Position numbers and translations under genes: made by a program
The notes under the pieces: generated by a model
Told to the model about the DNA's origin: nothing
The model's input: only the letters and a program-made list of their open reading frames with translations
Databases searched by the model: none
DNA from: Octopus sinensis
Lineage: Eukaryota
Direction of reading: 5' to 3'
NCBI RefSeq assembly: GCF_006345805.1
Contig: NC_043005.1
Location: forward strand, 44,950,001-45,014,000
Length of the DNA: 64,000 bases
In this document: positions 4,066 to 63,478 of the stretch, piece by piece
How positions within the stretch are numbered: position 1 is the first letter of the stretch
Layout of the letters: every line of letters starts with the position of its first letter

Positions 4066-4133
4066 AGGTAGTGTACTGGTTAAGAGTGCAGGCTAGTAAC
4101 CCCAAGATTGAATAAATAATAATAATAATGATA

Positions 4134-4202
<69 letters not shown>

Positions 4203-4212
4203 ATAATAATAA

Positions 4213-5285: not shown

Positions 5286-5311
5286 ATAATAATAATAATA
5301 ATGATAATAAA

Positions 5312-5355
<44 letters not shown>

Positions 5356-5374
5356 TGATGATAATAATAATGAC

Positions 5375-5523
5375 ACCAACAAAAATATACCTTAGGATTG
5401 AGAACCCAGGGTTGGGTTCAAAATTCTACCAGGACACCTAATGAAGGCTGGAGAGTAAATCAGCCGAAACGTGGTGACAACAAATAAGATAAGGACACAT
5501 ATCAATCCAATGAAAATAATGTA
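5375..5523 (+). ncRNA. Second copy of the hammerhead-bearing module (core 5433-5478, degenerate)
   Basis: gacac CTAATGA a GGCTG gagagtaaat CAGCC GAAAC gtg gtgac. Core G5 is mutated to A and the cleavage base to G. Same tail as the 3947-4065 copy. Confidence 0.65.
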
Positions 5524-7865: not shown

Positions 7866-9879
7866 TGTATGTACATATGTATGTAGGTAGGTAGGTAAGT
7901 ATGTTTGTATGTATGTATATATATATATATAAATATGTTTATTATATAAATATAAGTGAATGCATATAAGCATATAAAAATATTATATATATATATATAA
8001 CCCTTACATTTAAAGATAAAGAAATTGATAGTAAAATAGCAACTTCTTTGATAACAATAGTTACCTTTATATATTAGTTCATTGTATCTAAATACAGCAA
8101 GAAATATATAGTGAAGGTGATGATAAGTCTACCACGGAAAAATACTTTCTCTTGATAAAATCAAGATTCCCTGTCTTCATATATATAATACATAAAGATG
8201 ACAATCCAGATAGGAAAATACAGTTTTTACTTCATGTAGCTTACATTAAGATTACAATCTAAAATAAGTGATCTTAGGAAAAAGAAAAAATAAAGCTTCT
8301 TTGAAATCTAGAATAATTAAAAATCAAAATATTATTTTAAAATATTTTTATTTTAATTTTGAAAATTTTGAGAACATTTATTTAATAATATGTTTACAAT
8401 TCATTTTTTCTTTTTTATCTTGAAGAAGTTCAATTCCTGTTTTCAGTTTAGCAATTCTTCAAAAATTTGTTTTCAGTTTAAAAATTTAGTATTTTTAATG
8501 TATGGAGAGAGAAGTAAAATTGTATAAAATTATTTAAGTAACTTCTCTGAAAATAAATATTTATGATATTCTTAAAATTCAGAAGATTTTAATTAGGTGA
8601 TTTTTCTACATAGTTTTCCCACAGTGAGGAAGGTTTTCTTATATTTTTGATTTTGTTAAATATTTCAGCTGGGACCCTTTAAATGTTATGTATATTTGGC
8701 AGAAGTCAACATTAATTCATAAAAAATGCTTAGAAACTCTTCATTAATTCTTGATATTTGCTGAATTACTGCTTCCAAACCCTTCATTTGTCTGCTACAG
8801 AATTACTACTTACAACTCTTCATTTGTCTGCTGCTACTTTTGAAAGTTTTCAATCATTATTGCTTACTAGAAGAAGGTTTACAGTAAAATCTAGTTTTTA
8901 GCTAGAAACAATAAAATGAACAGCATTTTGACTTTAAATTAATATTCTCCACACAACATTATTCACTAGTATGGCAAGTTTATAGCTAATTCTTTGAATC
9001 ATCATCATCATCATTCTCAACATCATCATCATCATCATCATCACCATCATCATTACTGATGTCATCATCATCATCATCATTATTTTCTTTTAGCCATTTG
9101 AGGGACCTTAATTGAAATGATTCTACTTTTAAGGAATGGCTCTTGACAGAACTTAATTTAGAAGATTATAAAATTTATTAGCTGGTGGGGCTTGTTAGAG
9201 CGGATGGGATAAAAGTACTTCTTATCACACCACAACTATTAAAGTAGCTTATCAAAGCCTCCTTTCAACAAGACTTGTTTGATTAACTCTACTTTTAATA
9301 CACGATGAATATATGTTTAGATTCCAAACACATCTATGAAAATCTTTGAAAGATATTATTACAAAACAGTTAAAATGAAAACGATTTAAACTAGCTAAAA
9401 ATGTAGGTGATGTTAAGAATCAAATATTTGTGTTTTAGTATATAGTTTTCTGCATGAGTGTGAATGTGTGTATGTGTGTGTGTGTGTAAATGTGTGTATG
9501 TGTAAGTGCATGTGTGTGTTATGTGTATAAGACTATGTGTATGTTTAATTTATCTGCAAAACAAGGGCACAAAAAGTAAAAAATGTTAAAAAAAATTTGA
9601 CAAATTTTATTCAAATTAGCACTCCCAGAAATTGTCTTGTTGAATAACAATAACAACAATAACAATAACAACAGCAACAATAACAATAACAACAAATACA
9701 ACAACATCGATATTAATGATTTCTGATGTAAGTACAATACCAGCAATTTTAAGAGAAAGGGCTTCATTGATTATATTAACACCATTACACATCTGGAACT
9801 TAATTTTATCAACCTCGTAAGGATGAAAGGTAAAGTCAACCCTGGTAGGATTTGAACTCAAAATGTAAACAGTTGAAAG

Positions 9880-16829: not shown

Positions 16830-17990
16830 TCTTTGACAAATGTTAGTAGAACAGTCCACAACTCTCCTACTCTATAGTAGATATGTAGATGACATTAATA
16901 TAATAGTTAGAACCAACTCTAGTGATGGTAATGTAGAGACTGAGAAGAATGTAATGGAGAGCATCCAGCAAATAGCTAACTCCATTCACCAAAGTATCAA
17001 GGTAACTATAGATTACCCCTCTAAGAACCCTAACAATAGACTCCCTGTACTTTGGTTAGAGACTGTGAACAATAGAGTGCAGCTCCTCCACTCTTATTAC
17101 ATGAAGCCCGTAACTTCAAAATATGTTGTTCACAAGAAATCAGCTTTGTCACACAACATGAAAATTAACATACTAACAGCAGACCTAGTAAGAATAATGA
17201 ACAATGTGTCCCCACAATGCGAACCCTATGAAATGAAGAAATATATACAGAACTTCATACACCACATGCAGTTCTCTGGATATGATAAGAAAGACAGGGT
17301 TCGTGTATACAGTGGGGCTAGAAAGAAATTAGATAATATTATATGAAATGATACCAGTGGTACCTGCCCTAGATATAGAAATAAAGAATGGAATATCATA
17401 CAAAGAACTTGTGACAAAGCAAACAGGGCGAACACGTGGTATAAAACCAACAAATATCAAGGAGTGATGTTTGTAGAGGCCCACAGCCCATGGAGAACTA
17501 GCCCGTAGATTTAGAAAAGCTCTGAAGGAGACCAAACGCAACATTAAAATTGTTGAAAAGCCAGGGAACTCTGTCAGATCACAACTATGTATGACATACC
17601 CCTTTAAGAATACCATATGAACCAATGATAACTGCATAGTATGTAGGATTAGCCCTGGTATTAACTGTAGAATTCAAAATGTAGTTTACAGCATAAGATG
17701 CATAGAAGGTGCTTGTAAGGACATGAACATGATGTACATAGGGGAGACTTCTAGGAGCATTGCAGAACAGATAAATGAACATCTAAGACAATATGACGAC
17801 AGAAAACAGTCCTCCATACTCTACCAACATGCCAAAGACTACCATGGAGGTAACTTAGGTCATCTTATCCAAGCACCCAAAAGACCCAACACTCAGACAA
17901 ATACGGGAGTACATCCTTATAAATGAAACCTCCCCAATACTAAATAGGAAATATACACAATAAATACCATACCTCCATACCCACAGTTTA
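16830..17990 (+). mobile_element. 5'-truncated Penelope-like element: RT C-half + C-terminal GIY-YIG endonuclease, inactivated
   Basis: YSRYVDDINII (RT catalytic), DYPSKNPNNRLPVL, YMKPVTS, a C-x4-C-x2-C-type linker, then VVYSIRC...YIGETSRS...NEH...QH. In-frame TGA at 17344 and 17618; frameshifts near 17480 and ~17860. Confidence 0.9.
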
Positions 17991-23045: not shown

Positions 23046-24894
23046 GAGTCCTTTTTCCTTAATGAATTTAAAGAGAAAATTAAAGGAATATGAAATATTT
23101 AATGACTAATGAAAATATAGATAGATATATTTTCTTTTTAACCACCTAATGGATCTATAACCTTATTTACAAACATTTTCTAGCTTAAATAGATCTATTT
23201 CCTTGTTACACCCAACTAATTGCTATAGTGACAGCAGTTTCAATACAAAATATTAATTGTAATATTAATCGTAATAGCTTTATTGATTAATTCTTCACAA
23301 TATCATTTTTAATTCCTTCATTTCTAATTTATATCATTTTTCTAAAATATTGGATTAAAAAAAAATTCAACATTTTATTTTGAAAAACCAGCCATAATGC
23401 CACTGATGATGTGACTTGTGTAAATAGGTTATGAACAAAAACGACACCTCCCTACCACTGGACTGTTGTTCTCATTTAATTGAAAAAAATATTGTCTTTT
23501 GTCTGCTCTGCATCAGAATAAATAATTCAATATTCTCTTTCTTTGATAGTTGTTTGAATTTTGTAAAAACATGCTGGAATATTCTATTTTTTGTTGAGGT
23601 TCATGAAACTCACATATTAGTTCCTGCTTTTGATAATAAATTCTAAATTTTAAAGCAATTGTCTAGCTCAAGATCTAGGTTAGTTTCTTTAAATTAAAAC
23701 TTAACATAAAGCCTATGATTCTCAAAATAGGTTTAAAAGTTGGTGAAAATCTTCTGCTTGAACTGAAATTGAAGTTATATTCTTGTTCCAAAAACTACAG
23801 AAGAAAATTGTAAAATTTATATCTCATATTTTTATGAGAAGCTTGTGTAAAATATTTATTTTTATACAAAAAATTGTACATCAGTTTTATACATTGACTG
23901 TAAACATGAATATTGGATAGATCAATACAAGATATAAACAGAAAGAAAAAGAAAGTGGGTATCTGGTGTAATCTGGCACTTAAGAAAGCACCAAATGGCA
24001 CTTGGTGCAAAGGGCCTGCTGCTTACATTTCCCTTCTTTTCCTCTTTGTTTATATCCCATTTTTACAATATCATGCATTCAATATATAAAAGTATTTGAA
24101 CAATCCTACTTTAATAAAAAGTTCAATTTATGATAAAACATTAAATTTTTTAAATTTAATTTTACTTGAAAGTTGATAATATTTCTTCATTGTCAAAATG
24201 TGAAATGTTTCATTTGGGAAAATTGAAAAAAAATATGAAACCTATTTCAGATTTTTCAGGCATAGGAAACAATTATGTCTTCAACAAATCCTTAGTCTAA
24301 ATCCTGTAGAAAAATGACCATATATTTGATATTTTCGAAATATAATATCTCTAGCTTATCTTACATGCCATAACTGCAATGCTCCCATCCTTTGTAGCTA
24401 TCTTAGATACAATACACAAAAACTCATTCAATAGCCTTTGGCAAAATGAAGACACATCATTCACATATCAACAAGCACATGTAATTAAGTACCTATGTAT
24501 CTACTCATATTTAGTCTTGAACAACATATTATTAAAATCCTTAAGGTCAGTGCAAAAGCAATACTTCACAATATCTGATAATCATTCCTTGCAACCTAAC
24601 ATTGGCTAAAACTGCTTTGCCAAAAAACTATGATCAGAAAACTAAAAGCATACAATGGAATACAACTCTTATATTAGAAACTGTGTTACTTTGCTGATAC
24701 ATACATAGCAAACATTTTAGGTTGTATCCAAGGAAGACCAACTCACTGATTGGTAAAAACCTCACGCTCATAGCAGCATGAGGGTTCAGTACATAGGTTC
24801 TGTGTGTGCACGTGCATGTGTGTGTGTATGTATGTGTGTGGTGCGTGTGTGTGTATGAGTGTGTATGTTGTGTGTGTATGCATACACACACTTA

Positions 24895-25140
<246 letters not shown>

Positions 25141-25934
25141 GTATATAATTCTTTAGTAAAAATATTATTAGCAGTAACTTGGAAGTTTTGGTCTGCTTAG
25201 CCTTCAAACAAGCATTAATATACATAGATATATACATATTTATGCATCGTGCATATATGTACATGTGTGTGTGTGTGTGTGCGCGCGCGTGCACATGTGT
25301 GTATGTGCGCGCACGTGTGTGTATATGTACCTGCAAGAAAATAGGCTTATAAATGCATGTACTACAGTCATTCTTTCATCATTTTTATAGACATTACTCA
25401 TACGTTGCATTTCCCACTCCAGACCTCTGGATTATAGAGTAAATATTTGCTCAGCTTCTTTATGATATGAAATGTCATATCATTTAATAATAACATTAAG
25501 CAACATTCAATAACTGATATCTTCAGGCTTTGCTGAAAAGGTATAGGTTGTTGCAATTTCTGACAATAATTCCCATACCATAAATATATGTCTTCAAGGC
25601 ACCAGCCCATTCTTTGAATCATGCAGTTTATATCAGACTCAGATCTACAAGTATTGATTTTGCCTGGGATAAACTTTATTTTACAATTACCCCAGTTTCA
25701 GATCTTGCAGTCATGAAACTGAAATCAAAACATTGATTTTAATGAATTTCTTCCAGTTTTGTTGGAAATTTCATGAAACATTTTAACTTTGATTTTGACC
25801 TTAAAAAAGAATGTGTTGGAATTAAGCAGTTTTAGTCAAATTTACAATATCTATAAACACTGTTAACCCTTTTGATGCCGTACTGCCAAAAGCATTAAAA
25901 CCACCAATGTCATATAAATTTCTGTCTTTTATTT

Positions 25935-26410: not shown

Positions 26411-26904
26411 TAAACCATTCCAAACTGCCTGAATTTATTAAAAGAAATCATTTTAGAATTCAAGTCTTAGCTAAAATATTCTTATCACATCATACACATG
26501 ATCACGTGACTAACCAGGTTATCAGATGGTCACAATGTGCTTTTGCATTGTTTCAGCCATCGAATGACACCGCCCTGCTGGCTAGATGAGCAGGCCAACA
26601 TTCCCCACTGATCAAGGAGATTGGAGCTAAATAAAATGAAGTGATTTGCTTAAGAACACAATACACTGTCCAGTCAGGGAATTGAACCCATGATCTAGCG
26701 ATCATAAGTGCAACAGCTTAACCACTAGGCCACACACCTTCACAAATGTTCTTGCATGAATCATAATTGTTTCAAATTTTGGCGCAAGGCCAATGATTTC
26801 AGGGAAGGGAGCAAGTTGATTACATCAACCCTGGTGATCCATTGGTACTTATTATATCGACCATGAAAGGATGAAAGGCAAAGTCAGCCTTATGAATCAT
26901 AATA

Positions 26905-27304
26905 CTTTTTTACTTGTTTCTGTCATTTGACTGTGGCCATGCTGGAGCACCGCCTTTAATCCAGCAAATCAACCCCAGGACTTACTCTTTGTAAGCCTAG
27001 TAATTATTCTATCGGTCTCTTTTGCTGAACAGCTAAGTTACAGGGACGTAAACACACCAGCATCGGTTGTCAAGCGATGTTGGAGGGGACAAACACAGAC
27101 ACACAAACATATACACACACATATATATAAATATATATATATATACAACGGGCTTCTTTCAGTTTCCGTCTACAAAATCCACTCACAAGGCTTTGGTTGG
27201 CCTGAGGACATAGTAGAAGACACTTGCCCAAGGTGCCACGCAGTGGGACTGAACCCAGAACCATGTGGTTGGTAAGCAAGCTACTTACCACACAGCCACT
27301 CCTA
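26905..27304 (-). mobile_element. SINE family A, full length, relatively young
   Basis: Reverse complement AGGAGTGGCTGTGTGGTAAGTAGCTTGC...GGGTTCAGTCCC (A/B boxes), a central microsatellite and the tail CAAATGACAGAAACAAGTAAAAAA; CpGs retained. Confidence 0.9.
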
Positions 27305-27769
27305 CACATAATGTACAATTTCAGTAGATAGATATGCTATCTTTTCCTTTTCTTTTATTTTTCCTAGTATAAACTAATTTTTAGGTTATATTCCAAACAG
27401 TAGTATAGTATATTGATAATTAAAGAAATTACATTTATGCTACTAAATCTCTCAAAATTCTTGATAATTTTGAAAATTGAATTAATAGGTGTAGGCATGG
27501 CTGTGTGGTAAGAAGATTGCTTCCAAACCACATTATTCCAAGTTCAATCCCAGTGTGGCACCTTGGTTTAGTGGCTTCTACTAAAGCCCTGGGCTGACCA
27601 AAGTCTTATGAGTACATTTGGTACATGGGAACTGAAGGATACCCATTGTATATTAATATTGCATGTGTGTGTGTGTATGACTGTATGTCACTCTCTCTAT
27701 ATGTGTGTATATGTATCTCTCTCTATATATATGTATGTATGTGTGTGTGTGTGTGAGTTTGGAGGGATA

Positions 27770-28285
27770 TATCATCAAGGTGGATACTGTGGTGGCTCTC
27801 AGTTATGTTCCAGATTACAGCTAACTGCATCAGTCGGTACTTAACGTCTGTGACTACTATTCATCATTCATGCTGTAAATTCCTCTGACAAGTTATTCCA
27901 TGTTTGCTTCACTGGATGATAATATTGTCTGGAGTGTATATAAGCAAAAATTATAACAATATAGAACTTGGAGATATGCCCATCCTTAAAATTTATTTCC
28001 TCTTGTTTTACAGTTTTATACAGCATATTTTTATGGTCATTACTACCTTCGAATATATACTGTATTTGATAATTTTTCTTGGTGTTGTTAGTCCTTTTCT
28101 CTTCTTGGTCATGAAAGTATGCTCGCCATCTCATGCTGTGTATGAAGGAATTGGTATAATCAATGAGATATTTTAGGCATTCCTTCTTAGGGAATAATGG
28201 AATGTCTTTTAGGGATGAGTCAATGTTGATTTTTCTCTATACTTTGGGACTCCACCTTAGTTGCTTGTTGAAAATCAAGAATTAT
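27770..28285 (-). mobile_element. Probable N-terminal fragment of a Penelope-like ORF
   Basis: KINIDSSLKDIPLFPKKECLKYLIDYTNSFIHSMRWRAYF resembles the YSxKNIP...RMRWxAxF N-terminal motif recalled from invertebrate PLE ORFs. Confidence 0.5.
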
Positions 28286-28291
28286 TATTAA

Positions 28292-28675
28292 CTAGCAGTA
28301 TCGCCCGGCGTTGCTCAGGTTTGTAAGGGAAATAACTATAAAGCATTTTTAGAGAGTTATAGCCAAAAAATAACAAAAAAATGGAAAAAAAATGATGGTA
28401 AATTTTTTTTGAGAGTTAAAAAAGGTGGAGTTGCGTCCCCTAGACGGTCTGTGGTTTGGGTTTCTGATTCTCGATCCCATGTCGAATTTATCGATCTTTT
28501 TCAGAACTGGGGGAACTTTTCAAAATTTTCGCTGCGTTAGTTTTGAATTATGACATTGGGCTATGTGTGTGTCAAGTTTCATCAGAATCGGTTGAAAGCC
28601 GTGGTCAGAGTGAGGGTACGAGAAAACAGACACACAGAAAACGCACAGACAAACTGCCGTTTATATAGAGAGAGA
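28292..28675 (-). mobile_element. Non-autonomous Helitron, subfamily 1
   Basis: Minus strand A|TC...hairpin CCTGAGCAACGCCGGG...CTAG|T; no TSD. Confidence 0.85.
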
Positions 28676-29063
28676 TGTAGGGATATATCATCCAGGTGGT
28701 TACTAGATGATAAATCCTGACGAGAAAAATACAGCATATATTTAAAGGTCATAATGACCATAAAAATATGCTGTATAAAATCCTAAAATATGAGGAAATA
28801 AATTTTGAGGATGAGCAAGTGTCTATGTTCTATATCATTATAATTTTTGCTTATATATATATGCACATTAATGTCAGACAATGAAAATGAGTGCTCAACA
28901 CCACATTGGTGAATGTAATTTCTTTATTTATGAATTAAGGCTACCATTGGTTTCATGTTAAGAAAAGTAGGAAAATATCCTAGTGTCTTGACAATTTTTC
29001 AACCCAATCACATGGAGAAAGGTGTTTGCCTCCATTTTGGAAAACACAGCCTCTCTCTCTCTC

Positions 29064-30416: not shown

Positions 30417-31097
30417 TGGGGCTAAATAGTGACAACAGCAATATCAGTTATTGAGAAATGTAGTTCTAAATCCAGATGAATGGTTCATAATATACCACCA
30501 AGGATTTCATGTATGTACAGTAAACTTTGACACTCTTAACATTTGTTGCAAGGCCAAACGTTCAGTGTTGGCAAGTGTGTTTGTAAGTATCATCTCATAC
30601 ATTCCCTTAAAATAAGTTTGATCCTGTAGCAAGACCATTTTCTATTATTGCATATTGAAAACATTTAAGTTGGCTTATCACATTAATCTGTAGTGATTGG
30701 TTAACATACCTATCATATGAGTTGTTGGACATCTGTTGAGTCCTGTGTTGTGATTGGTTGAGGGTTGTGCAGGAATTGGATCAAAGGTCCAATTATGTGT
30801 TCTAGAGCTTCCTTTTTACTATAAATTGGTGTGACAACTTATTTCTGAGTCAGAGGAGTGAAACGTTTTTTTTTCAAGGCAAGTAATGCTGATCCTGCCA
30901 TTTTCAGAGGAAGATTATCATATAACATAGTCCATATAACCAATGTCAACCCAGGCTGAATTATCAAAACGATGGATGAACAACAACCAACAGTATTAGT
31001 AATATTTCTTGTTTGATACAACTTTACAAATTAATAAAGTCCTGCTGTTATTTTAAAGATGGCTTCTTTTGTTACTTCTATGAATGAACATGCAAAA

Positions 31098-31496
31098 TCT
31101 TTATATATAAAAGAGAGGTTGTGTGCTGTCTGTCTCCTACGATTTAGATTCCTAACTACTCCCACATTTTGCGGTGCAGTTTAACCAAAACCGGGTATCT
31201 TATAGTCGTGATTCATATCAAGCCCTTCTGGGTATTAGCGCGCATCTACGATGAGTCTACGATTTAAAAAAAAAATTACCATCAATTTTTCCCATTTTTT
31301 AATGCATTTTTGGCATATATAAGGGAAGTAACTCTCTAAAAATTTATTATTAAATCTCAGAACGTAAAAAGCTACAGTAACACCCCCCCCCCTTGTGGTT
31401 AGCCATATTGAGATGGCTATTATACTTTACATCTCTAAAAATGCTTATATAGTTATTTCCCTTACAAACCCGAGCAACGCCGGGCGATACTGCTAG
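31098..31496 (+). mobile_element. Non-autonomous Helitron, subfamily 2
   Basis: A|TC at 31097/98, hairpin CCCGAGCAACGCCGGG at 31469-31484, CTAG|T at 31493-31497. Confidence 0.88.
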
Positions 31497-32072
31497 TATA
31501 TTATACAATGATATACATGATTCTTTAACCAAACCAAGGGAGACTTTAAACCAACAGTAGAACAACTAATACCACATTGAACCAGCAAGTTTCTATTTAT
31601 CTCAACTTCAACTATGAGAAGACTGGGATTGGGTTAATAATATTCTGTAGACTATAAAATACACATGTTAATTAGTTAATTTAGATGTTATATAAGAAAG
31701 TGTAGATCAACTTTTCACCAATTCTTTATATGACCAGCTTTTGCAGACAGTCATGTTGCAGCAGAGCCAGTCATTGAAATGTTGCATTCTTCATTCATTG
31801 AAGTTTTCTCACTTCTCTACATGACTAAATTTTCTGTCACGTTACAAAAGGGTTAGTTAGTCATTTGCATATTACATTCTACATTTCTACTCAGTTTTCA
31901 GTGTTTAAAACTGTTGTTACAAGTCTGTTATAAATACAGACTATAGCATCATGTGTGGCTAACCACAGAGCATTAATTAACTTTCTTTGACAGATGTCAC
32001 ATCACCACTTTTTTCCAGGGACCATCAAGCTGTAAATGCCTCGTTTTTATTGGAAGAACAACATGAGTTATT

Positions 32073-39640: not shown

Positions 39641-40059
39641 TTTTACTCTTTTACTTGTTTCAGTCATTTGACTGTGACCATGCTGGAGCACCGCCTTCAT
39701 TCGAGCAAATCGACTCCAGGACTTATTCTTTGTAAGCCTAGTACTTATTCTATCAGTCTCTTTTGCTGAACTGCTAAGTTACAGGGATGTAAACACATCA
39801 GCATCAGTTGTCAAGCAATGTTGGGGGGGACAAGGGGACAAACACAGACACACAAACATATACACACACATACATACATATATATACATATATACGACGG
39901 GCTTCTTTCAGTTTCCATTTACCAAATCCACTCACAAGGCTTTGGTTGGCCCAAGGCTATAGTAGAAGACACTCGCCCAAGGTGCCAAGCAGTGGGACTG
40001 AGCCTGGAACCATGTGGTTCATAAGCAAGCTACTTACCACACAGCCACTCCTATACCTA
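39641..40059 (-). mobile_element. SINE family A, full length
   Basis: Colinear with 26905-27304. Confidence 0.9.
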
Positions 40060-40311
40060 TGTATTGTTTTTAAATAAGAAGTATGTGATGTATGATTTTT
40101 TGGGGGGTGTTTTTCTGTTATCTTTGTAGTGATCATATCCTTAATACAGGATGCTTCTTTGAAGATTTTTGTTTTAATAGATAGTAAATATTTCTTGGTC
40201 ACGTGTAGATGAAACTAATATGCAGAAACAGGAAGGGTACAGTACAAACAAGAAGATATTTTTTCGAACACAAAATTCTTTTGAACAGCAGATATACTGG
40301 GTAAATTCTCC

Positions 40312-42239
40312 GGTTAATATAGGGCGTAACAAATATCAGAAAATCAAAAAAAAAATGTGTGTAATAGGTGTAAAACAACTTCCTATGAACGAATATGAAA
40401 AAAAAATTTCGCGCACGCGAAAGGGGGGTGGGGGAGATGCCTCGGAAAATTCACATCGGGAAGTTCCGAAAGCGTCTGAGGAGCTGACCCGGGCACCAAA
40501 ACAAAAAAAAAATAGTGTAATATGTGTAAAACAACTTGCTCTAAACGAATATGACAAAAAAAAATGCGCTCTCGCGAAAGAGGGGTGGGGGAGAGGCCTC
40601 GGAATATTTATATCGGGAATTTCCGAAAGCGTCTGAACCGGGCACAAAAACAAAAACAAAAACAGCGTAATAGGTGTAAAACAACTTGCTCTAAACGACT
40701 ATCATGAAAAAAATGCGCGCTCGCGAAAGGGGGGTGGGGGAGAGGCTTCGGAAATTTCACATCTTCAGTCCACGGCCTTTAAACTAAGAAAAAATAGTGT
40801 AATTGGTGTAAAACTACTTGTTCTAAACGAGTATCAAGAACACACACTCACACATGAATCATAAACTCCGTATTTCGCAAAAAAAAATAAATAAAGAGAA
40901 GAAATTCTGGAAAAAGTGAAGAAATGTTGGATCTCATTCCTTGGTTAAAGCTATTTTAAACATTAAATTTATGCTTTTCTTTGAAATAGTTCAGATATAT
41001 GCAATTCTTCTCACTTATTAAAATGCATTTATCAGAAAAAAAGAGACAGAAAAAATTATTATTTTGTGTCAATCCTTCCCTAATTATCCTTTATTAATTA
41101 GTTTTGGCGTGTATTTTTTTCCCAAATTAATTTTTTCACCTTTACAACACTGTTTAGTAAAGCAATTAATTATCTTTATAATTTGCATATTTGACTTATT
41201 AATCAAAATTCTCTAGATGTAATATATACTAAGTAATGCATCCTTCATTTATGTGTTCCGTTCTGTATTATGCATGCGTGACTGTTTGTATGTAAGTGTG
41301 TTTAACTGTGCACATGAATGTGAATATTAAAGAACATATTTATTTACTATGATTGTTATTTTCAGAACAAATAAATCTTTTGGCTGTTATGTTATTGATG
41401 TTATTATTATTGCTAGTTAAAGGGTGGTGACTTGGCTGAATATTTTGAGTCTTGTAGTATGTAGTTGTGTTAGTCAATATTCTGAGTTCAAATCCAACTC
41501 ATTTCTTTATCCTCATTATCGATGGACCACTCAAAGAGGTATGTATACATTATCATTTTCGTAACATAATTTCTGTAGTATTTCAAGATGTTTCTGACAC
41601 GTATTTTGATTCACATGGCGGAGATCCAACATTTCTTCACTTTTTCCAGAATTTCTTCTCTTTATTTTTTTTTTTTGCGAAATACGGAGTTTATGATTCA
41701 TGTGTGAGTGTGTGTTCTTGATACTCGTTTAGAACAAGTAGTTTTACACCAATTACACTATTTTTTCTTAGTTTAAAGGCCGTGGACTGAAGATGTGAAA
41801 TTTCCGAAGCCTCTCCCCCACCCCCTTTCGCGAGCGCGCATTTTTTTCATGATAGTCGTTTAGAGCAAGTTGTTTTACACCTATTACGCTGTTTTTGTTT
41901 TTGTTTTTGTGCCCGGTTCAGACGCTTTCGGAAATTCCCGATATAAATATTCCGAGGCCTCTCCCCCACCCCTCTTTCGCGAGAGCGCATTTTTTTTGTC
42001 ATATTCGTTTAGAGCAAGTTGTTTTACACATATTACACTATTTGTTTTTTGTTTTGGTGCCCGGGTCAGCTCCTCAGACGCTTTCGGAACTTCCCGATGT
42101 GAATTTTCCGAGGCCTCTCCCCCACCCCCTTTCGCGTGCGCGAAATTTTTTTTTCATATTCGTTCATAGGAAGTTGTTTTACACCTATTACACACATTTT
42201 TTTTTTATTTTCTGATATTTGTTACGCCCTATATTAACC
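40312..42239. mobile_element. Non-autonomous foldback-type DNA transposon with ~620-bp TIRs and 8-bp TSD
   Basis: Arms 40312-40935 and 41621-42239 are near-identical reverse complements starting GGTTAATATAGGGCG. AATTCTCC at 40304-40311 and 40240-equivalent 42240-42247. Non-coding 685-bp spacer. Confidence 0.95.
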
Positions 42240-42883
42240 AATTCTCCTTACAAGGTGGAAAAATTTGTCTACAAGCTAGTTTGCTTGTATATATACACAC
42301 ATGTTTTACAGTAAGCTATTTAGCATCTAAATCGATGGATGAATTTGTCAATAGGCAGTTTAGCTTAATGGTAAAGCACTCAGCTGAAGTCTTGGGGAAT
42401 GTGGATTTGAGCCCCATGGCTGTTTGTTGACAAATTCTTCTGCTTTGTAAGGGTAATTCACCCAGTATTTCTGCTCTTCTAATGACAATTCTGCATTCAA
42501 AAGAATATATTCTTGTTTGTATCATACAATACACATTTTGATACTTCTAATAAAAACAAATGTTAGTTTGTTTATATTTATACGCACGTGTTGCAAGGAG
42601 AGTGTCTCAGCTTTATATGAGTACACATACTTATGGTTAAGTTGATGTTATTGATGTTTCAACCCCCAGTTAGTTCTAATCAAGCTGCCCTGTTATCACA
42701 GGCATTTTAACTGTGGCCAGGCCATACCATCCTTTATTCAGATATTCAGAGTGTATTTAGGATTACATTCTCCTTATATCATTTAAACCAGCCATATTCA
42801 GCACAAATATTCTATTTGTTTTAATACAAACTCACCAGATCTGGTCTCTCATCCTACCCTACAATGTCATTCTGAAAATCAAC

Positions 42884-43274
42884 AGGAGTGCCCTGTGGTA
42901 AGTAGCTTGCTTACCAACCATATGGTTCCAGGTTCAGTCCCACTGTGTGGCACCTTGGGCAAGTGTCTTTTACTATAGCCTCGGGCCGACCAAAGCCTTG
43001 TGAGTAGATTTGGTAGAGGGAAACTGAAAGAAGCCCATTGTATATATGTATATGTATATATATATATATGTGTGTGTGTTTGTCCCCCCAACATTGCTTG
43101 ACAACCGATGCAGGTGTATTTACGTCCCTGTAACTTAGCAGTTCGCCAAAAGAAACCAATAGACTAAGTACTAGGCTTACAAAGAATAAGTCCTGGGTCA
43201 ATTTACTCAACTAAAGGTGGTGCTCCAGCATGGCCGCAGTCAAATGACTGAAACAAGTAAAAGAGTAAAAGAGT
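42884..43274 (+). mobile_element. SINE family A, full length
   Basis: Head AGGAGTGCCCTGTGGTAAGTAGC, tail GTAAAAGAGTAAAAGAGT. Confidence 0.9.
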
Positions 43275-43346
43275 AATCACTTCATCAAAATCTCAAAGTT
43301 ACAAGATAATGTTTGGCTAATTCAAAACAATGTGAATAAATAAGTA

Positions 43347-45617: not shown

Positions 45618-45734
45618 ATTGTGGCAATCATCAAGTATATTACTGAGCAAAACTTCAGAAACTCAGTAAATACTGGAGTTTAATACAGGTTTCATAAAGC
45701 TGACAAAGTAAATTCTTCTGACACATTTGGTGAT

Positions 45735-45920
45735 AGGTGCAGGAGTAACTGTGTGGTAAGTAGCTTGCTTACCAACCACATGGTTCTGGGTTCATTCCCA
45801 CTGTGTGGCACCTTGGGCAAGTGTCTTCTACTATAGCCTCGGGCTAACCAAAGCCTTGTGAGTGGATTTGGTAGACGGAAACTGCATGAAGCCTGTCGTA
45901 TATATGTATGTGTGTCTGTG

Positions 45921-45953
<33 letters not shown>

Positions 45954-46170
45954 TTGTGTGTCTGTGTTTGTCCTGCCCCCAACATCACTTGACAACCGAA
46001 GCTGGTGTGTTTACATCTCCGTAACTTAGTGGGTTGGCAAAAGAGACAGATAGAATAAGTACTAGGCTTATAAAGAATAAGTCCTGGGGTTGATTTGCTC
46101 GACTAAAGGCAGTGCTCCAGCATGGCCACAGTCAAATGACTGAAACAATTAAAAAAAAAGAGAAAGAGAG
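45735..46170 (+). mobile_element. SINE family A, full length
   Basis: A/B-box head, central (GT)n, conserved tail. Confidence 0.9.
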
Positions 46171-48199
46171 AATTGCATCATTTTAACTAAGAAAAAGTCT
46201 AAGTGATTAGATTTGTTTGGGTTGATACACCAGTTGAATATTTCATCAATGTTTCATTAAGACATCTCATAAAATTTCTTTATCAAATTCCTTACTTGTT
46301 CCAAAAATCACCTCAGTCATTCTTAAAAGTTACTTTTTTTTTATTATTAATCAGTATCCTTGATAACTTTTCTTTGAATGGGTTGTTATGTAAAATGTTC
46401 ATCACCTGAAAGAATATAGTAAGAAACTCTTGGGACAGATAAATAGCAGAAGGTTTTCAGAGACAAAAGAAACACCCCGTCCCCCCCCCTGCACGTGTTT
46501 CAGCCCTTAACTCCTTACACTCTAAGGGGGATGCATTTTGGATACCACTCTACTACCACATTCTGTACCATTGTCTACATTGCAGCCCTTTTGGAAGGTT
46601 AAGTTGGTCCAAATTGAAAGTACCTTAAGTGTTGTAACCAATGCAGCCACAGATATATGTAATGCAGTAACTTCTCAGAATCGATCATGCATCTCTAACA
46701 TCTTAGCCTAGATTAAACCTTAAACAGCAGACATTATCATTAGATGTTTCATTAGAGAATAGCAGACATCGTCAATTAATGTTTCAAATATTTTACATGG
46801 ATATGGCCATCATCAAAGGAAAGTAAATATTTTACGGCACTTTTTAATGAGATCGTAAATTTTACTGTGTTGAGAGACTAACAATTATTATAGTTATTGT
46901 ACTTATTAAAATAGAAAAATAAAAGATTACCCTTTAAAAACTGAAAGGTTTTTTTTGTATATTTGGCATACATATTTATCAACCCTTTCTGACTGTTTAA
47001 TAGTTGGGTAAAGACTCCCTTCAATCATGAATAACCATGCAATTTCACTTAGAAATTTCCCCTTCATGGCACAAGTCCATACAACGTTGTTTATGAAAGA
47101 CCAGCAGTCATCCCTGCATATCAGTCTCCCCTCTCCATGCCACCAATGTTATCCAAGGGAAAGGCAAAGGCTGATACAACTTGGCACCAATGATGTCGCA
47201 ATTCATTTCTACCAACTGAGTGAAGTGAAGTGAAGTGATGTGAAACAAAGTATCTTGCTCAAGAACACAGCACTCACCTCAGCTTGGAATCAAACTTGCA
47301 ACCTCTTAATTGTGAGTCCAACACTCTAATCACTGAGCCAATGGTTAAAGCATTGCTTTTTTGGCCAAAAATAGCATATTTGGTAATTTCCTTTCTACTA
47401 TAGGCACCAGGCCTGAAATTTTGGGGGAGATGCAAGTCAATTCCATTGACCTCAGTGCTTGCCTGGTGCTTATTTTATCAATCCCAAAAGGATGAAATGG
47501 AAAACGACCTCAGCTGAATTTGAACTTGGGACATAAAGGCAGATAAAATGCTGCCAAGCATTTTATCTGGCATGCTAACAATTCCACCAGCTCACTGCCT
47601 TTACATTTTTGGTGTTAAATTAACTGCACATGCAGACAGCTAAACAAACATGCCCCACCACCACCACCATTCAACCAGTCATATTTTTTGGTTGTTGAGT
47701 AAATTGTCATTTAACTATTTCTATTTTGTTCTAACATCCACCAATAACATTCTAAAACATTCATCATTTTCCATATAAATAAACTTTGATTTGAAACTCT
47801 AACAACAGATGTTTTGAAGCAGCTAGAGGCTGATATAAAAGACATTCTCTCACATCTATGTTGCATCATATCCACTTCTATGTGCTATTAACCCCTCACA
47901 TACAATATTACTATATACTCATATATTTGGTAATCGTGCAGTTCTTATCACTTTCACTCTCTCTCACTCACTCACTCACTCCTTGTGACCCCACTATTTT
48001 TATTGTTTTTTTTAAAGCCTGGTGCTTACTATGTCAGTCTCATTTTACAAAAATGCTGTTACAGGGATGTAAACAAATGAAAACCAGTTGCCTAGTGGTG
48101 ATAGAGGACAAACACAGACATAAAAACGTACATACATACATACATACATACATACATACATACATACATACATACATACATACATACATACATACATAC

Positions 48200-50452: not shown

Positions 50453-50770
50453 TTTAACATCATCTCTTTTGAAATAATCACCTTGTGCAGCAATACACTG
50501 GTCCCAGTATTCCTGCTACTTTGGGAATCCAGCCTGGAAGTTGTTTTCTATGAGCAAGTCGAGGACCCTCTGCAATTCACTCTGGATCTCAACAACGATG
50601 TTAAAATGGCAACCTTTAAGCTGCATTTTCATCTTGGGGAAGAGATGGAAGTTTGTAGGTGCTAAATCTGGAAAATAGGGCAGGTGCAGAAGCAATACCT
50701 TGTTGTTTTTGGTGAGGAACTCATGAGTGAGGAGACCTTGGTAACAGGGTGCATTGTCATCATGAAGAAT
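50453..50770 (-). mobile_element. Mariner fragment related to 43347-44230
   Basis: Colinear with 43410-43730 (TTTAAC(G/A)TCATCTCTTTTGAAATA...). Confidence 0.8.
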
Positions 50771-59859: not shown

Positions 59860-60395
59860 TATTCTTCTTTTACTCTTTTTACTTGTTTCAGTCATTTGAC
59901 TGCGGCCTTGCTGGAGCACCGCCTTAAATCGAGCAACTCGACCCCGGAACTTATTCTTTGTAAGCCCAGTACTTATTCTATCGGTCTCTTTTGCTGAACC
60001 ACTAAGTGACGGGGACATAAACCACCTTTAGTTGAGCAAATTGACCCCAGGACTAATTCTTTGTAAGCCCTGTATTTATTATATCGGTCTCGTTTGCCAA
60101 ACCGCTAAGTTAAATGGACGTAAACACACCAGCATCATTGTCAAGCGATGCTGGGGGAACAAACACAGACACACAAACACACACACACACTCTCACACAC
60201 ACACACACACACACACACATGCACATATATACGACGGGCTTCTTTCAATTTCCATCTACCAAATCCACTCACAAGGCTTCAGTTGGCCCGAGGCTATAGT
60301 AGAAGACACTTGCCCAAAGTGCCACGCATTGGGACTGAGCCCAGTACCATGTGGTTCGTAAGCAAGCTACTTACCACACATCCACTCCTATACCT
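59860..60395 (-). mobile_element. SINE family A with ~105-bp internal duplication
   Basis: The segment GAGCAA...GACCCC...TTCTTTGTAAGCCC...CTAAGT occurs twice (~59930 and ~60033). Confidence 0.88.
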
Positions 60396-60830
<435 letters not shown>

Positions 60831-61250: not shown

Positions 61251-61679
61251 ATATGCATACATATATACATATACACACACATGTATGTATGTATGTATGT
61301 ATGTATGTATGCGTGTACATATATGTATTTATTACATTATCATTTTGAAACATAACAGAATGCTTTTTAATGTATGTTAACATTCTGTTGTGACTGAAAG
61401 AGTCATCCCATAAATTGAAGTTCATCATGAATTGTTGACTGTTGACAGTATAATATTCTCTTCCAAAATTCGTTTGTTTGATTCAACTTTTATTCTATCT
61501 AACTCTTCTCTTCAACTTAAAAATTAAATATCCCCCTCCCCCAGTCCAGAAGTCTTACCTATCTGAGATTCCTCCTCTCTTTATATGTATTAAAAACAAA
61601 AAGCTTCAGATCTTGGAAATATCATGAAAGAGAAAGCCTTTAACGTAAAAATCCTTAAGTTAAAATAAAAACTCAGACT

Positions 61680-61864
61680 AGGTGCAGGTGTGGCTGTGTA
61701 GTAAGAAGCATGTTTCCCAACCACATGGTTGTGGGTTTAGTTCCACTGGTGAGCAGCTCGGGCAAGTGTGTTCTACTATAGCCTTGGGCCAACCAAAGCC
61801 TTGTGAGTGGATTTAATAAATGGAAACTGAAAGAAGCCCATCATATATGTATATACATGCATAC

Positions 61865-61900
<36 letters not shown>

Positions 61901-62085
61901 CTGTCTGCATTTGTCCCCATCACTGCTTGGGAACTGGTGTAGGTGTGTTTACATCCCTGTGAATTAGTGGTTCAGCAAAAGAGACTGATAGAATAACTGT
62001 CAGGCTTAAAAATCAAAAAGTATTGGGGTTGATTCATTACACCAAAAAAATTCTTCAAGGTGGTGCCCCAGCATGGCCGCAGTCT
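61680..62085 (+). mobile_element. SINE family A
   Basis: Head AGGTGCAGGTGTGGCTGTGTAGTAAG, tail AAGGTGGTGCCCCAGCATGGCCGCAGTC. Confidence 0.85.
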
Positions 62086-62677
62086 CACCACAGCTGCAAC
62101 AATTAAAAGGTAAAATGTAAAGGTGAGACAATTGATAGAATGTGATCCAAAGAGAAACACTGAGCTTTATTCAGATTAATCTTCAATAATACTATGGTCT
62201 GCATGCTCTGTGGGATTAAGCTCTAAACAAAATTATCTTTCATGCTCAATCTCCATTTAAGGTTGCAAAATCAATTAAATTGCACCATCATTAGCTGCTT
62301 CTTCTTTCATTTGTTTCATTCAAATGAAGCTGTATGAAAATGGGTTTCAAATTCTGGCACAAGGTCTGAAAATTTGGCAGCAGAGGGGTAAGTCAATTAT
62401 ATTAACTCCAGTGCTCAACTGGGACTTATTTTATCAACCCTGAAAAGATGGAAGGCAAAGTCAACTTTGGCGGTATTTGAACTCAGAACATAAAGACAGA
62501 CAGAATGCCACTAAGCATTTCCCTGCATGCTAATGATTATGCCAGATTGCTGCCTTAACGTTGCTGTATAATAATGATATTAATTATTTCTAGGGATTTT
62601 ACTCATTGTTTGTCAAGTCTTACCATTTACATCTTTGTTAGGTTTCCATAATTTGTATCTCAGCATTAAATAATGTA

Positions 62678-63243
62678 TTGGGTTGTCTGGAAAGTTTGTG
62701 CCGATTTATAGTAGCTTACCTTTCGACTTATTTTAGAACATGGTTGAATCCATAAAATAGGATTTGACTACACCTCCATTTAGAACACAGTTTAAGTTAT
62801 CTTTTTGTGGAAGAAGATTTATGTTCTTATAACCTGTATTAATTCTGTAACCCTTTAAAATGGAAGATAAGAAAGTTCATTTTCGGCACTTGATGATTTG
62901 GGAACCAGACAAAAATTGCTGCATCTCGGGTGGGATGTGTTACCCCACCCTCCATATTCACCAGATATTGCTCCCACGGATTTCCACTTATTCAGGTCTC
63001 TGCAGAATAGTCTTAATGGTAAAAATTTCAATTCCTTGGATGACGTAAAAAGATACCTTGATGAATTCTTTGCCATGAAACCACCTCAATTCTGGGAAGA
63101 GGATATTTTCAAGTTAAAGGAAAGATGGAGATGCATTGTGCAACGAAATGGTTCGTATTTGGTTGATTATAAATGTAATGGCAAGTATTTATTGACCTTT
63201 TTCTTTCCTTTAAAAATCGGTATGAACTTTCCGGACAACCCAA
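62678..63243 (+). mobile_element. Internally deleted mariner (Hsmar1/SETMAR-like), TA TSD
   Basis: TIRs TTGGGTTGTC(T/C)GGAAAGTT, TA on both sides. N-terminal MEDKKVHFRHLM is fused out of frame to WDVLPHPPYSPDIAPTDFHLFRSLQNSL. Confidence 0.92.
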
Positions 63244-63478
63244 TACATTGAGTGCTAATTTGCACATTAATTTCACAAGTAGGCTGTTCCAGTGATCAGA
63301 TCAACTGGAAAAACCCTTGTTGATGTAACTGACAAAGTGTCAGTTTTTAAAAAAATTTATTTTGAAGTCCCCAACTCAGATATTGTCACTGTCATTTGTT
63401 ATCAAGGTGCTTCATTTACCCATCAGTCATCCTCAGTAATGGTGCGTAAAGAGATGTAACAGTTACTGCTTCTTTACC

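What the first reader, a model, noticed from the sequence alone, without database searches (positions are those of the whole stretch)
40304..42247. Young foldback transposon with ~620-bp TIRs, GG termini and 8-bp TSD
The two arms are almost identical by eye and keep many CpGs in a CpG-poor window, implying recent insertion. GG ends with an 8-bp TSD do not fit hAT or P (CA/TA ends); Merlin or Mutator/Phantom-type foldbacks are the candidates. No transposase is present, so the autonomous partner is unidentified. A ~0.6-kb stem could form hairpins in DNA, or long dsRNA if this region is transcribed, which matters in coleoids known for extensive A-to-I editing (inference).
Basis: partly seen in the sequence, partly recalled or inferred. 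Interest (0 to 1): 0.72.

Follow-up and report, generated by a model that had tools for sequence, protein, structure and literature searches.

The report
Young non-coding foldback transposon in octopus
A 1.9-kb mobile DNA element made of two near-identical inverted arms jumped recently into an older repeat in an octopus-type genome; this is an ordinary kind of transposon, and the enzyme family that moves it (Merlin or Mutator-like) is still unproven.

Summary
The element spans 40312-42239 (1,928 bp). It has inverted arms of 624 and 619 nt that differ by 2 substitutions and 5 one-base indels. The ends read GGTTAATATAGGGCG..., and an exact 8-bp duplication (AATTCTCC) flanks it. Joining the flanks with one duplication copy restores a gapless alignment to an older paralogue nearby, so this is a true insertion and not an assembly artefact.

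Each subrepeat carries a conserved 26-nt motif, which is the classic foldback architecture. The 685-bp loop and the arms encode nothing.

The arms have CpG o/e 1.31, against 0.23 for the rest of the window. SINE-like repeats in the window match Octopus sinensis and O. vulgaris loci at up to 96%, which supports the coleoid guess.

Octopus Merlin elements that I recovered have GG ends, 8-bp duplications (3 of 3) and ~354-bp CpG-rich terminal inverted repeats. They share no sequence with this element beyond the GG. Repbase already lists a Merlin foldback-like non-autonomous element with 1-kb arms made of tandem repeats.

Best reading: a non-autonomous foldback element, with a Merlin partner (~0.5) or a MULE/Phantom partner (~0.3). 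It is a new member of a known kind and of modest interest.

The parts
40304..40311 (.). Left copy of the 8-bp target-site duplication, AATTCTCC
   Evidence: Exact match to 42240-42247 and not extendable. The paralogous uninterrupted site carries a single AATTACCC.
40312..40935 (+). Left arm (TIR), 624 nt, starting GGTTAATATAGGGCG
   Evidence: 617 of 624 aligned columns are identical to the reverse complement of the right arm. CpG o/e is 1.31.
40312..40336 (+). Unique terminal segment of the arm, outside the subrepeats. Presumed cleavage and terminal recognition site (inferred).
   Evidence: The 19-mer at the tip occurs only at the two ends of the element. The subrepeat array begins at about 40337.
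40337..40900 (+). Tandem subrepeat array of the left arm. Units of about 157, 149 and 132 nt, plus a degenerate fourth unit.
   Evidence: TRF reports period 157, 2.8 copies and 84% matches over 40340-40763. See also the repeat finder families D1 and D3 and the alignment A1.
40361..40386 (+). Conserved 26-nt motif GTAATWKGTGTAAAACWACTTSYTMT, copy 1 of 4 in the left arm. The other copies are at 40517-40542, 40667-40692 and 40799-40824. Candidate transposase-binding site (inferred).
   Evidence: 8 matches in the window, all inside the element, 4 per arm in mirror positions; 0 expected by chance.
40936..41620 (.). Unique loop (middle domain), 685 nt, 27.7% GC, non-coding
   Evidence: CpG o/e 0.53. 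The longest ORF is 84 aa and there are no Pfam hits. No similarity to the rest of the window or to the fetched loci. No credible Rfam hit.
41621..42239 (-). Right arm (TIR), 619 nt, ending ...CGCCCTATATTAACC. It carries the mirror subrepeat array (41792-42211) and the 26-nt motifs at 41731-41756, 41862-41887, 42011-42036 and 42166-42191.
42240..42247 (.). Right copy of the 8-bp target-site duplication, AATTCTCC
40243..40311 (.). Left part of the older repeat that was the insertion target. It continues at 42248-42274.
   Evidence: With 40311 joined to 42248, the sequence aligns across the junction to the inverted paralogue 42424-42521. The alignment spans 98 nt at about 80% identity, with one 2-nt gap well upstream of the junction. 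It scores 95, against 80 with both TSD copies kept and 72 with none.
42424..42521 (.). Inverted paralogue of the target sequence. It is the other arm of an older, TA-flanked, MITE-like palindromic unit and serves as the 'empty site' reference.
   Evidence: A tRNA-like segment at 42354-42425 lies between the two old arms (Rfam RF00005, 33.4 bits).

Best explanation
This is a non-autonomous, foldback-type class II (TIR) DNA transposon of 1,928 bp.

Shown: it inserted by a reaction that duplicated exactly 8 bp of target, inside an older MITE-like repeat. It consists of two ~620-nt inverted arms around a 685-nt non-coding loop. Each arm has a 25-nt unique tip beginning GG, followed by 3.5 tandem ~150-nt subrepeats.

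Inferred: it is moved in trans by a DDE transposase encoded elsewhere in the genome. That enzyme recognises the GG-terminal tip and binds the 26-nt motif repeated four times per arm. It excises the element and reinserts it at an 8-bp staggered cut.

The most likely partner is a Merlin (IS1595-like) transposase, at about 0.5. A MULE/Phantom transposase is next, at about 0.3.

The insertion is recent. The TSD is intact, the arms show no CpG decay although the genome is strongly CpG-depleted, and the arms differ by only 2 substitutions in 619 sites. A rough upper bound is ~0.45 My (0.05-1.6), using the octopus calibration of JC 0.09 = 25 My and assuming the arms were identical at insertion and not homogenised since.

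The confidence given (0.88) is for the general statement that this is a real, recent, non-autonomous foldback TIR transposon.
For: Real insertion: exact 8-bp TSD. The empty-site reconstruction aligns without a gap at the junction to a paralogue that carries one copy of the target octamer. The arms are not perfectly identical and a unique loop is present.

Foldback anatomy.

Non-autonomous. tblastn with three Merlin proteins finds nothing in the window.

Youth. Among subrepeats 1-3, CpG columns are no more variable (3 of 18) than other columns (31 of 113).

Merlin fit:
- The literature states that Merlin families have a terminal GG and 8-9 bp TSDs, and that O. bimaculoides is unusually rich in Merlin, with 191 hits (PMC8101967).
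- I recovered an Octopus Merlin encoding a 305-aa DDE_Tnp_IS1595 protein that is identical in O. sinensis and O. vulgaris.
- Its three copies have GG ends, 8-bp TSDs (GCAAATCT, CAAGGCTT, GAAACTTT) and ~354-bp TIRs with CpG o/e 1.3-1.5.
- Two further Merlin families (L008, L009) also show GG ends and 8-bp TSDs.
- The Repbase table lists Merlin-N5_DR, non-autonomous, with 1,000-bp TIRs each holding a 113-bp x 5.2 tandem array, and several C. briggsae non-autonomous Merlins whose TIRs are built of tandem repeats (PMC8101967 S1 Table).

Subterminal repeats are shown experimentally to bind transposase and raise excision for the foldback-like MULE Muta1 (PMC5499845). By analogy, this supports the proposed role of the 26-nt motifs.
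Against: - No autonomous partner and no second copy of the family could be found. There is none in the window, in 118 kb of fetched loci, of which ~92 kb are Octopus, in JGI metagenome contigs or in IMG/VR.
- The arm pseudo-ORF has no relatives in the protein database.
- There is no nucleotide similarity to the Octopus Merlin TIRs beyond the GG.
- All three Merlin families examined end GGC[A/G]..T.TTT, whereas this element ends GGTTAATAT.
- The superfamily is inferred from one TSD and two terminal bases, and MULE/Phantom elements can share both.
- Mutator families outnumber Merlin families in O. vulgaris, 55 to 18 (PMC13282606 supplement).
Confidence: 0.88

Rival explanations
1. This is a foldback element of the Mutator superfamily (Phantom-type MULE). 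The anatomy and the cut-and-paste mechanism are the same as in the best explanation, but it is mobilised by a MULE transposase.
For: - Most described foldback elements are assigned to Mutator/Phantom (PMC4079207; PMC3169594).
- Phantom TSDs are 8-10 bp and its TIRs reach 613 bp; Spectre makes 8-bp TSDs (PMC6446971).
- Muta1 has 8 or 9 bp TSDs, the terminus GGGTCTACCC and subterminal tandem repeats (PMC5499845).
- The left terminus of Tm1 is CGGTTAA, which resembles the GGTTAA found here.
- Mutator is more abundant than Merlin in O. vulgaris, with 55 families against 18.
Against: - 9 bp is the usual MULE/foldback TSD length (Tm1 is 'most commonly 9 bp'); 8 bp is at the low end.
- The third terminal base here is T, not the G of GGG/GAG-type MULE ends (own knowledge).
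- The foldback architecture with tandem subrepeats is not specific to MULEs, because Merlin-N5_DR has it too.
- No MULE domain was found among the long ORFs of the window.
Confidence: 0.3
2. This is a non-autonomous element of another superfamily that makes 8-bp duplications: hAT, P/Galileo-like, Zisupton or Novosib.
For: - The predominant hAT TSD is 8 bp (PMC5499845).
- hAT is the largest 8-bp-TSD group in O. vulgaris, with 134 families.
- Galileo shows that foldback-like long TIRs with internal repeats can arise in the P superfamily (PMC3688188 and PMC3573991 abstracts).
- 123 TIR families in O. vulgaris are unclassified.
Against: - hAT ends are YARNG and P ends are CA-type (own knowledge of Yuan & Wessler 2011, not re-read here). 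This element begins GGTTA at both ends, and the TSD boundaries leave no room to shift the ends.
- Galileo makes 7-bp TSDs (own knowledge).
Confidence: 0.1
3. This is not a transposon. It is an assembly artefact (a palindromic chimeric read) or a local inverted duplication.
For: Near-identical inverted arms are what foldback chimeras in long-read data look like. All five indels between the arms are one-base differences, three of them in homopolymer runs, which could be sequencing errors. There is only one copy in the window.
Against: - An artefact would not produce an exact 8-bp direct duplication of the target abutting the arm tips.
- It would not have a 685-nt unique loop.
- It would not leave an empty site that aligns without a gap at the junction to a paralogue.
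- The arms also have an internal organisation (tip plus tandem subrepeats that are only 84% alike) that predates this copy.
Confidence: 0.02

Closest known systems
Non-autonomous Merlin elements with long, internally repetitive TIRs (Repbase Merlin-N5_DR of zebrafish; MERLIN2/4/5/8_CB of C. briggsae)
   Same: No coding capacity. Very long TIRs built of tandem repeats: Merlin-N5_DR has 1,000-bp TIRs with a 113-bp x 5.2 array in each arm. Merlin elements have GG termini and 8-9 bp TSDs.
   Different: No sequence comparison was possible, because Repbase sequences are not on hand. Membership rests on the TSD length and two terminal bases only. The unit length here is ~150 bp, with 3.5 units per arm.
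Octopus Merlin (8.7-kb element encoding the 305-aa DDE_Tnp_IS1595 protein P0197; L003 4266-12986, L005 4253-12988, L004 3888-12938)
   Same: Same host genus. GG termini, 8-bp TSDs in 3 of 3 copies, long (~354 bp) CpG-rich TIRs (o/e 1.3-1.5, against 1.31 here), and signs of recent activity: copies are 99.6% alike and the protein is identical in two species.
   Different: It is autonomous and 8.7 kb long, and it carries a LINE inside. Its TIRs are imperfect (96%) and hold only a microsatellite (TGTA/CATA), with no long-period tandem subrepeats. Its termini are GGCGATGTTTCG and GGCATAGTTTCG, against GGTTAATATAGG here. There is no detectable nucleotide similarity.
Foldback elements of the Mutator/Phantom group (Drosophila FB, Meloidogyne Tm1, Aedes Muta1) and the unclassified foldback Tetris of D. 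virilis
   Same: Long TIRs composed of a terminal motif plus tandem subrepeats, a non-coding middle domain in most copies, and TSDs of 8-10 bp. Tetris has ~220-bp internal tandem repeats and 8-9 bp TSDs, and no autonomous copy has been found for it.
   Different: In those families 9 bp is the commonest TSD. Their subrepeats are usually short (12-15 bp in Muta1 and Tm1). The termini are GGG-type in Muta1 and asymmetric in Tm1. The host phylum differs.
Galileo (P superfamily) of Drosophila
   Same: Foldback-like long TIRs with internal repeats that hold multiple transposase (THAP) binding sites (PMC3688188). This is a functional analogue for the repeated 26-nt motif.
   Different: Galileo belongs to the P superfamily and has 7-bp TSDs and different termini (own knowledge). 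The family was not tested further here.

Membership tests
Foldback-type TIR elements (a structural class, not a superfamily) | Very long TIRs that make up most of the element, around a short middle domain | tested here: met
   Arms of 624 and 619 nt out of 1,928 nt, with a 685-nt loop.
Foldback-type TIR elements (a structural class, not a superfamily) | TIRs internally composed of tandem subrepeats | tested here: met
   3.5 units of ~150 nt per arm, 84% matches.
Foldback-type TIR elements (a structural class, not a superfamily) | Flanked by a target-site duplication (evidence of transposition) | tested here: met
   Exact 8-bp TSD, plus a paralogous empty site.
Merlin superfamily | Transposase with a DDE_Tnp_IS1595 domain, encoded by the element or by an autonomous partner sharing its TIRs | not testable with these tools
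   The element encodes nothing and the window holds no Merlin remnant. The host genome could not be searched by DNA, so no partner was identified.
Merlin superfamily | TSD of 8 or 9 bp | tested here: met
   8 bp. Merlin copies checked here gave 8 bp in 5 of 5 elements.
Merlin superfamily | TIRs begin 5'-GG | tested here: met
   GGTTAATATAGGGCG at both ends.
Merlin superfamily | TIR sequence similarity to a Merlin family of the same host | tested here: not met
   No similarity to the Octopus Merlin TIRs beyond GG (the alignment score is within the shuffle range; no blastn hit above chance level (best E 0.06, 15-60 nt)). The three families examined end GGC[A/G].... Only 1 of ~18 Octopus Merlin families could be examined.
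Mutator superfamily (MULE / Phantom foldbacks) | MULE transposase in an autonomous partner with the same TIRs | not testable with these tools
   No MULE domain in the long ORFs of the window.
Mutator superfamily (MULE / Phantom foldbacks) | TSD of 8-11 bp, typically 9 | tested here: inconclusive
   8 bp is within the range but is not the mode. One copy gives a single data point.
Mutator superfamily (MULE / Phantom foldbacks) | Long TIRs with a terminal motif plus subterminal repeats | tested here: met
   However, this feature is shared with some Merlins.
hAT superfamily | 8-bp TSD together with YARNG termini | tested here: not met
   The TSD length fits, but the termini are GGTTA and not YARNG. 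The motif is from own knowledge; the TSD length is.
piggyBac / Kolobok (TTAA-target elements) | TTAA target-site duplication | tested here: not met
   A TTAA lies at positions 3-6 of each end. However, the duplicated target is the octamer AATTCTCC, and the paralogous empty site has no TTAA at the junction.

The most novel reading that the evidence does not exclude
The element belongs to a currently active, so far undescribed octopus foldback family, mobilised by Merlin. Its CpG-rich arms are undecayed at CpGs even between 84%-alike subrepeats. That could reflect recent horizontal arrival or escape from germline methylation. When transcribed, its ~617-bp perfect hairpin would be a substrate for ADAR hyper-editing or endo-siRNA production in a coleoid.
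Probability: 0.1. Interest if true: 0.5.

Novelty: new member of a known kind. Interest (0 to 1): 0.25.

Why it matters
Taken alone this is routine repeat annotation. It has three modest uses.

- It is a clean, verifiable example of a very recent DNA-transposon insertion in an octopus-type genome, with an intact TSD and an internal empty-site control. That fits reports that many TIR families are recently active in Octopus vulgaris (PMC13282606).
- Foldback elements have not been described for cephalopods in the searchable literature. Such elements are known elsewhere to cause inversions and to seed satellite DNA (PMC4079207).
- If the partner is Merlin, the family would be a tractable pair for testing how a little-studied eukaryotic transposase uses repeated subterminal sites: a donor with four candidate binding sites per arm, plus a 305-aa transposase.

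The dsRNA and editing angle is untested.

Tried and rejected
- Other copies in the window: none (blastn; motif searches).
- Other copies elsewhere: the 26-nt motif and the 24-nt terminus gave no match in JGI metagenome contigs or IMG/VR. These collections hold little or no cephalopod DNA, so the negatives are weak.
- Spurious arm ORF as bait for other copies: there is no exact record and no homologue.
- Literature search for the terminal and motif strings: the only hit was an unrelated primer.
- Organism via the LINE ORF at 4128-5177: the best hits were 65-70% identical, in an unnamed ENA assembly, which was uninformative. The organism was settled instead through repeats shared with Octopus loci.
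It was replaced by ORF-wise scans.
- Pfam on 27 further long ORFs of the window: only LINE, Penelope-like and Tc1/mariner remnants.
- Merlin loci L006 (O. sinensis) and L007 (O. bimaculoides): no recognisable TIRs or TSDs around the gene.
- L008 and L009 share no repeats with the window, so they are not from an octopus.
- piggyBac-like reading (TTAA near the tip): rejected on the empty-site evidence.
- From memory, the IS1595-family end consensus of the ISNwi1 subgroup (ggnnatTAT) resembles GGTTAATAT. No held paper contains that string, so it stays a lead and is not used as evidence.
- Marquez & Pritham 2010 (the Phantom paper) is not held.
Full report
**1. Observation.**
Two inverted arms, 40312-40935 (624 nt) and 41621-42239 (619 nt), align over 624 columns with 617 identities. 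They differ by two substitutions (40438 T/G, 40509 A/C) and five one-base gaps, all in the right arm. Both arms end in GGTTAATATAGGGCG. The terminal 19-mer occurs nowhere else in the 64-kb window, even allowing three mismatches. The octamer AATTCTCC directly abuts both tips (40304-40311 and 42240-42247) and cannot be extended. Each arm holds 31 CpGs, giving CpG o/e 1.31. The rest of the window has o/e 0.23, and none of 608 sliding windows of arm length reaches the arm value. Folded as a single strand, 617 of 624 left-arm bases pair with the right arm. The MFE is -1256 kcal/mol, against -437 +/- 10 for shuffles.

**2. It is a real insertion.**
The left flank 40243-40307 is an inverted copy (about 80-84% identical) of 42455-42521. 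I removed the element and one copy of the octamer by joining 40311 to 42248. The alignment to that paralogue then runs straight across the junction and extends to 98 nt. The query reads ...GTAAATTCTCC|TTACAAGGTGG... and the paralogue reads ...GTGAATTACCCTTACAAAGCAG.... The alignment scores 95, against 80 with both octamers kept and 72 with none. So the target was a pre-existing repeat carrying one copy of the octamer, and the insertion duplicated exactly 8 bp. This result, the 685-nt unique loop and the small differences between the arms together exclude a palindromic assembly chimera. The target itself looks like an older, TA-flanked, MITE-like palindrome. Its arms are 40243-40311 plus 42248-42274 on one side and 42424-42521 on the other. 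It encloses a tRNA-like segment at 42354-42425 (Rfam tRNA, 33.4 bits).

**3.
Each arm is not a uniform sequence. A 25-nt unique tip is followed by a tandem array of ~150-nt units: 157, 149 and 132 nt, plus a degenerate fourth unit. TRF reports period 157, 2.8 copies and 84% matches, with a mirror array in the right arm. Every unit carries a conserved 26-nt motif, GTAATWKGTGTAAAACWACTTSYTMT. It has eight matches in the window, all within the element, four per arm, with none expected by chance. The three outer units also carry a CpG-rich block, TTCGCGCACGCGAAAGGGGGGTGGGGGAGAGGCCTCGGAA. This is the classic foldback layout of terminal motif, subterminal tandem repeats and a non-coding middle domain.

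Among subrepeats 1-3, CpG columns are no more variable (3 of 18) than other columns (31 of 113). The family lineage therefore shows no methylation-type CpG decay, although the host window is strongly CpG-depleted. Only the innermost degenerate unit has CG->CA changes. The numbers are small.

**4. No coding capacity.**
The longest loop ORF is 84 aa. No loop or arm ORF hits Pfam even at E<=1. tblastn with three Merlin proteins finds nothing in the window. The longer ORFs of the window are only LINE (zf-RVT, 4128-5177), Penelope-like (GIY-YIG, 17621-17923) and Tc1/mariner remnants. The element is non-autonomous and its partner is not in this window.

**5. Host.**
The tools never name the source. 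However, the window's abundant ~400-bp SINE-like repeat has at least seven copies, for example 26903-27315, 31093-31497 and 39641-40071. It matches loci from Octopus sinensis (GCA_006345805.1) at up to 96% and from O. vulgaris (GCA_951406725.2) at about 86%.

**6. Which transposase?**
The literature gives these hallmarks.

- Merlin: terminal 5'-GG in all families, 8- or 9-bp TSDs and TIRs of 24-462 bp. O. bimaculoides is among the richest bilaterians, with 191 hits (PMC8101967).
- MULE: TSDs of 8-11 bp.
- Phantom: TSDs of 8-10 bp and TIRs of 18-613 bp (PMC6446971).
- Tm1 foldback: TSDs mostly 9 bp (PMC3169594).
- Muta1: TSDs of 8 or 9 bp and the terminus GGGTCTACCC. Its 12-bp subterminal repeats bind transposase and raise excision (PMC5499845).
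- Tetris: ~220-bp subrepeats, 8-10 bp TSDs and no partner found (PMC4079207).

To test the Merlin hallmarks in the host genus, I took an O. bimaculoides Merlin protein from the supplement of PMC8101967 and searched the protein collection. I then fetched the encoding loci. One 305-aa DDE_Tnp_IS1595 protein is identical at two O. sinensis loci and one O. vulgaris locus. The element around it is 8.7 kb long and the copies are 99.6% alike, with ~354-bp TIRs that are 96% identical. Its ends are GGCGATGTTTCG... and ...CGAAACTATGCC. Its three copies have 8-bp TSDs: GCAAATCT, CAAGGCTT and GAAACTTT. The TIRs are CpG-rich, with o/e 1.3-1.5. Two more Merlin families, from non-octopus ENA contigs, also show GG ends and 8-bp TSDs.

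So Merlin in Octopus has the same hallmarks as the element under study and is recently active. Against a direct link, there is no nucleotide similarity between this element and those TIRs beyond the GG. All three Merlin families examined end GGC[A/G]..T.TTT, whereas this one ends GGTTAATAT. Only 1 of ~18 Octopus Merlin families could be examined.

The foldback layout does not by itself favour Mutator. The Repbase table reproduced in PMC8101967 lists non-autonomous Merlin-N5_DR with 1,000-bp TIRs, each containing a 113-bp x 5.2 tandem array. It also lists several C. briggsae non-autonomous Merlins whose TIRs are tandem repeats. Mutator families are about three times as numerous as Merlin families in O. 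vulgaris, 55 against 18. hAT also makes 8-bp TSDs, but its ends are YARNG (own knowledge) and do not fit. A TTAA-target reading is excluded by the empty site.

My weighting is Merlin about 0.5, MULE/Phantom about 0.3 and other or unclassified about 0.2.

**7. Mechanism.**
Shown: a non-coding element with TIRs, an 8-bp TSD and repeated subterminal motifs, inserted in a pre-existing repeat.

Inferred: a DDE transposase supplied in trans binds the repeated 26-nt motifs and the GG tip, synapses the two ends and excises the element. It reinserts the element at an 8-bp staggered cut, and gap repair gives the TSD. The long, near-perfect arms can extrude as a hairpin or cruciform. If transcribed, they would make a ~617-bp dsRNA. 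No data here show that the locus is transcribed.

**8. Age.**
The arms differ by two substitutions in 619 sites (d = 0.0032). I used the octopus calibration quoted in PMC13282606, where JC 0.09 is about 25 My. I assumed the arms were identical at insertion and not homogenised afterwards. This gives about 0.45 My, with a Poisson range of 0.05-1.6 My. The assumption is weak for a DNA transposon. The intact TSD and the absence of any CpG->TpG/CpA difference between the arms are independent signs of youth.

**9. Novelty and verdict.**
Foldback-type non-autonomous TIR elements are well known, including within Merlin. No paper in the searchable library describes one in cephalopods. Automated libraries for Octopus list many unclassified TIR and MITE families and may already contain this one.

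The element is a new member of a known kind and of modest interest. The decisive step is to search the octopus assemblies with the termini, collect all copies and find the one with an ORF. That could not be run with the collections available here.

Noticed in passing
window 40243-40311 + 42248-42521: The insertion target is an older palindromic, TA-flanked, MITE-like unit of ~345 bp once the insert is removed. Its ~98-nt arms are ~80% alike (TACAAACAAG...CTTGTTTGTA). It encloses a tRNA-like sequence at 42354-42425 (Rfam RF00005, 33.4 bits; ARAGORN finds no tRNA). No other copy was found in the window or the fetched loci.
   Followed up: partly
window 26903-27315, 31093-31497, 39641-40071, 42882-43277, 45733-46173, 60021-60396, 61675-62122: A ~400-bp SINE-like repeat with an embedded microsatellite is the commonest repeat of the window. 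Its copies match Octopus sinensis and O. vulgaris loci at 80-96%, which is what identifies the host as an octopus-type genome.
   Followed up: partly
L003 4266-12986; L005 4253-12988 (O. sinensis); L004 3888-12938 (O. vulgaris): An 8.7-kb Octopus Merlin element carries LINE ORFs inside it (RVT_1 and an endonuclease domain, minus strand, 6.0-9.1 kb). It nevertheless exists as three copies with different 8-bp TSDs, 99.6% alike, so the Merlin seems to have transposed with the LINE as a passenger. The 305-aa transposase is identical in the two species. A second inverted pair (4638-4981 and 9412-9755) lies inside the element.
   Followed up: partly
L003-L005, L008 (2070...), L009 (3437-5465): Three Merlin families related to the O. 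bimaculoides query share the terminal pattern GGC[A/G]..T.TTT as well as 8-bp TSDs. This suggests a conserved end motif for this Merlin clade.
   Followed up: no
L008 5066, 6539, 8012, 9480: In an unnamed ENA contig, the right end of a Merlin element recurs four times at a 1,473-bp period, each time with the same flanking octamer and a 104-aa DDE_Tnp_IS1595 fragment. This is a tandemly amplified transposon end.
   Followed up: no
window 4128-5177; 16837-17923; 1257-1502, 50519-50770, 62871-63248: Other transposon remnants are present. They are an intact 349-aa LINE C-terminal ORF (weak zf-RVT match, 23.2 bits, below Pfam's cut-off; best database relatives only 65-70% identical), a Penelope-like piece (weak GIY-YIG match, 17.7 bits, below Pfam's cut-off), and Tc1/mariner transposase fragments.
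   Followed up: partly
window 40345, 40423, 40556, 40729, 40888: All five one-base indels between the arms are bases missing from the right arm. Three of them lie in homopolymer runs. They may be real deletions or sequencing errors.
   Followed up: no
window ~24701-25500 and ~28001-28900: These are the two patches of the window outside the element with the highest CpG o/e (0.8-1.0, against a mean of 0.23). The first overlaps simple repeats. They were not examined.
   Followed up: no
L001, L002 (ENA ERZ25066843): An unnamed long-read assembly with Mb-scale contigs holds LINE copies 73-74% identical at the DNA level to the window's LINE at 4221-5387.
   Followed up: no
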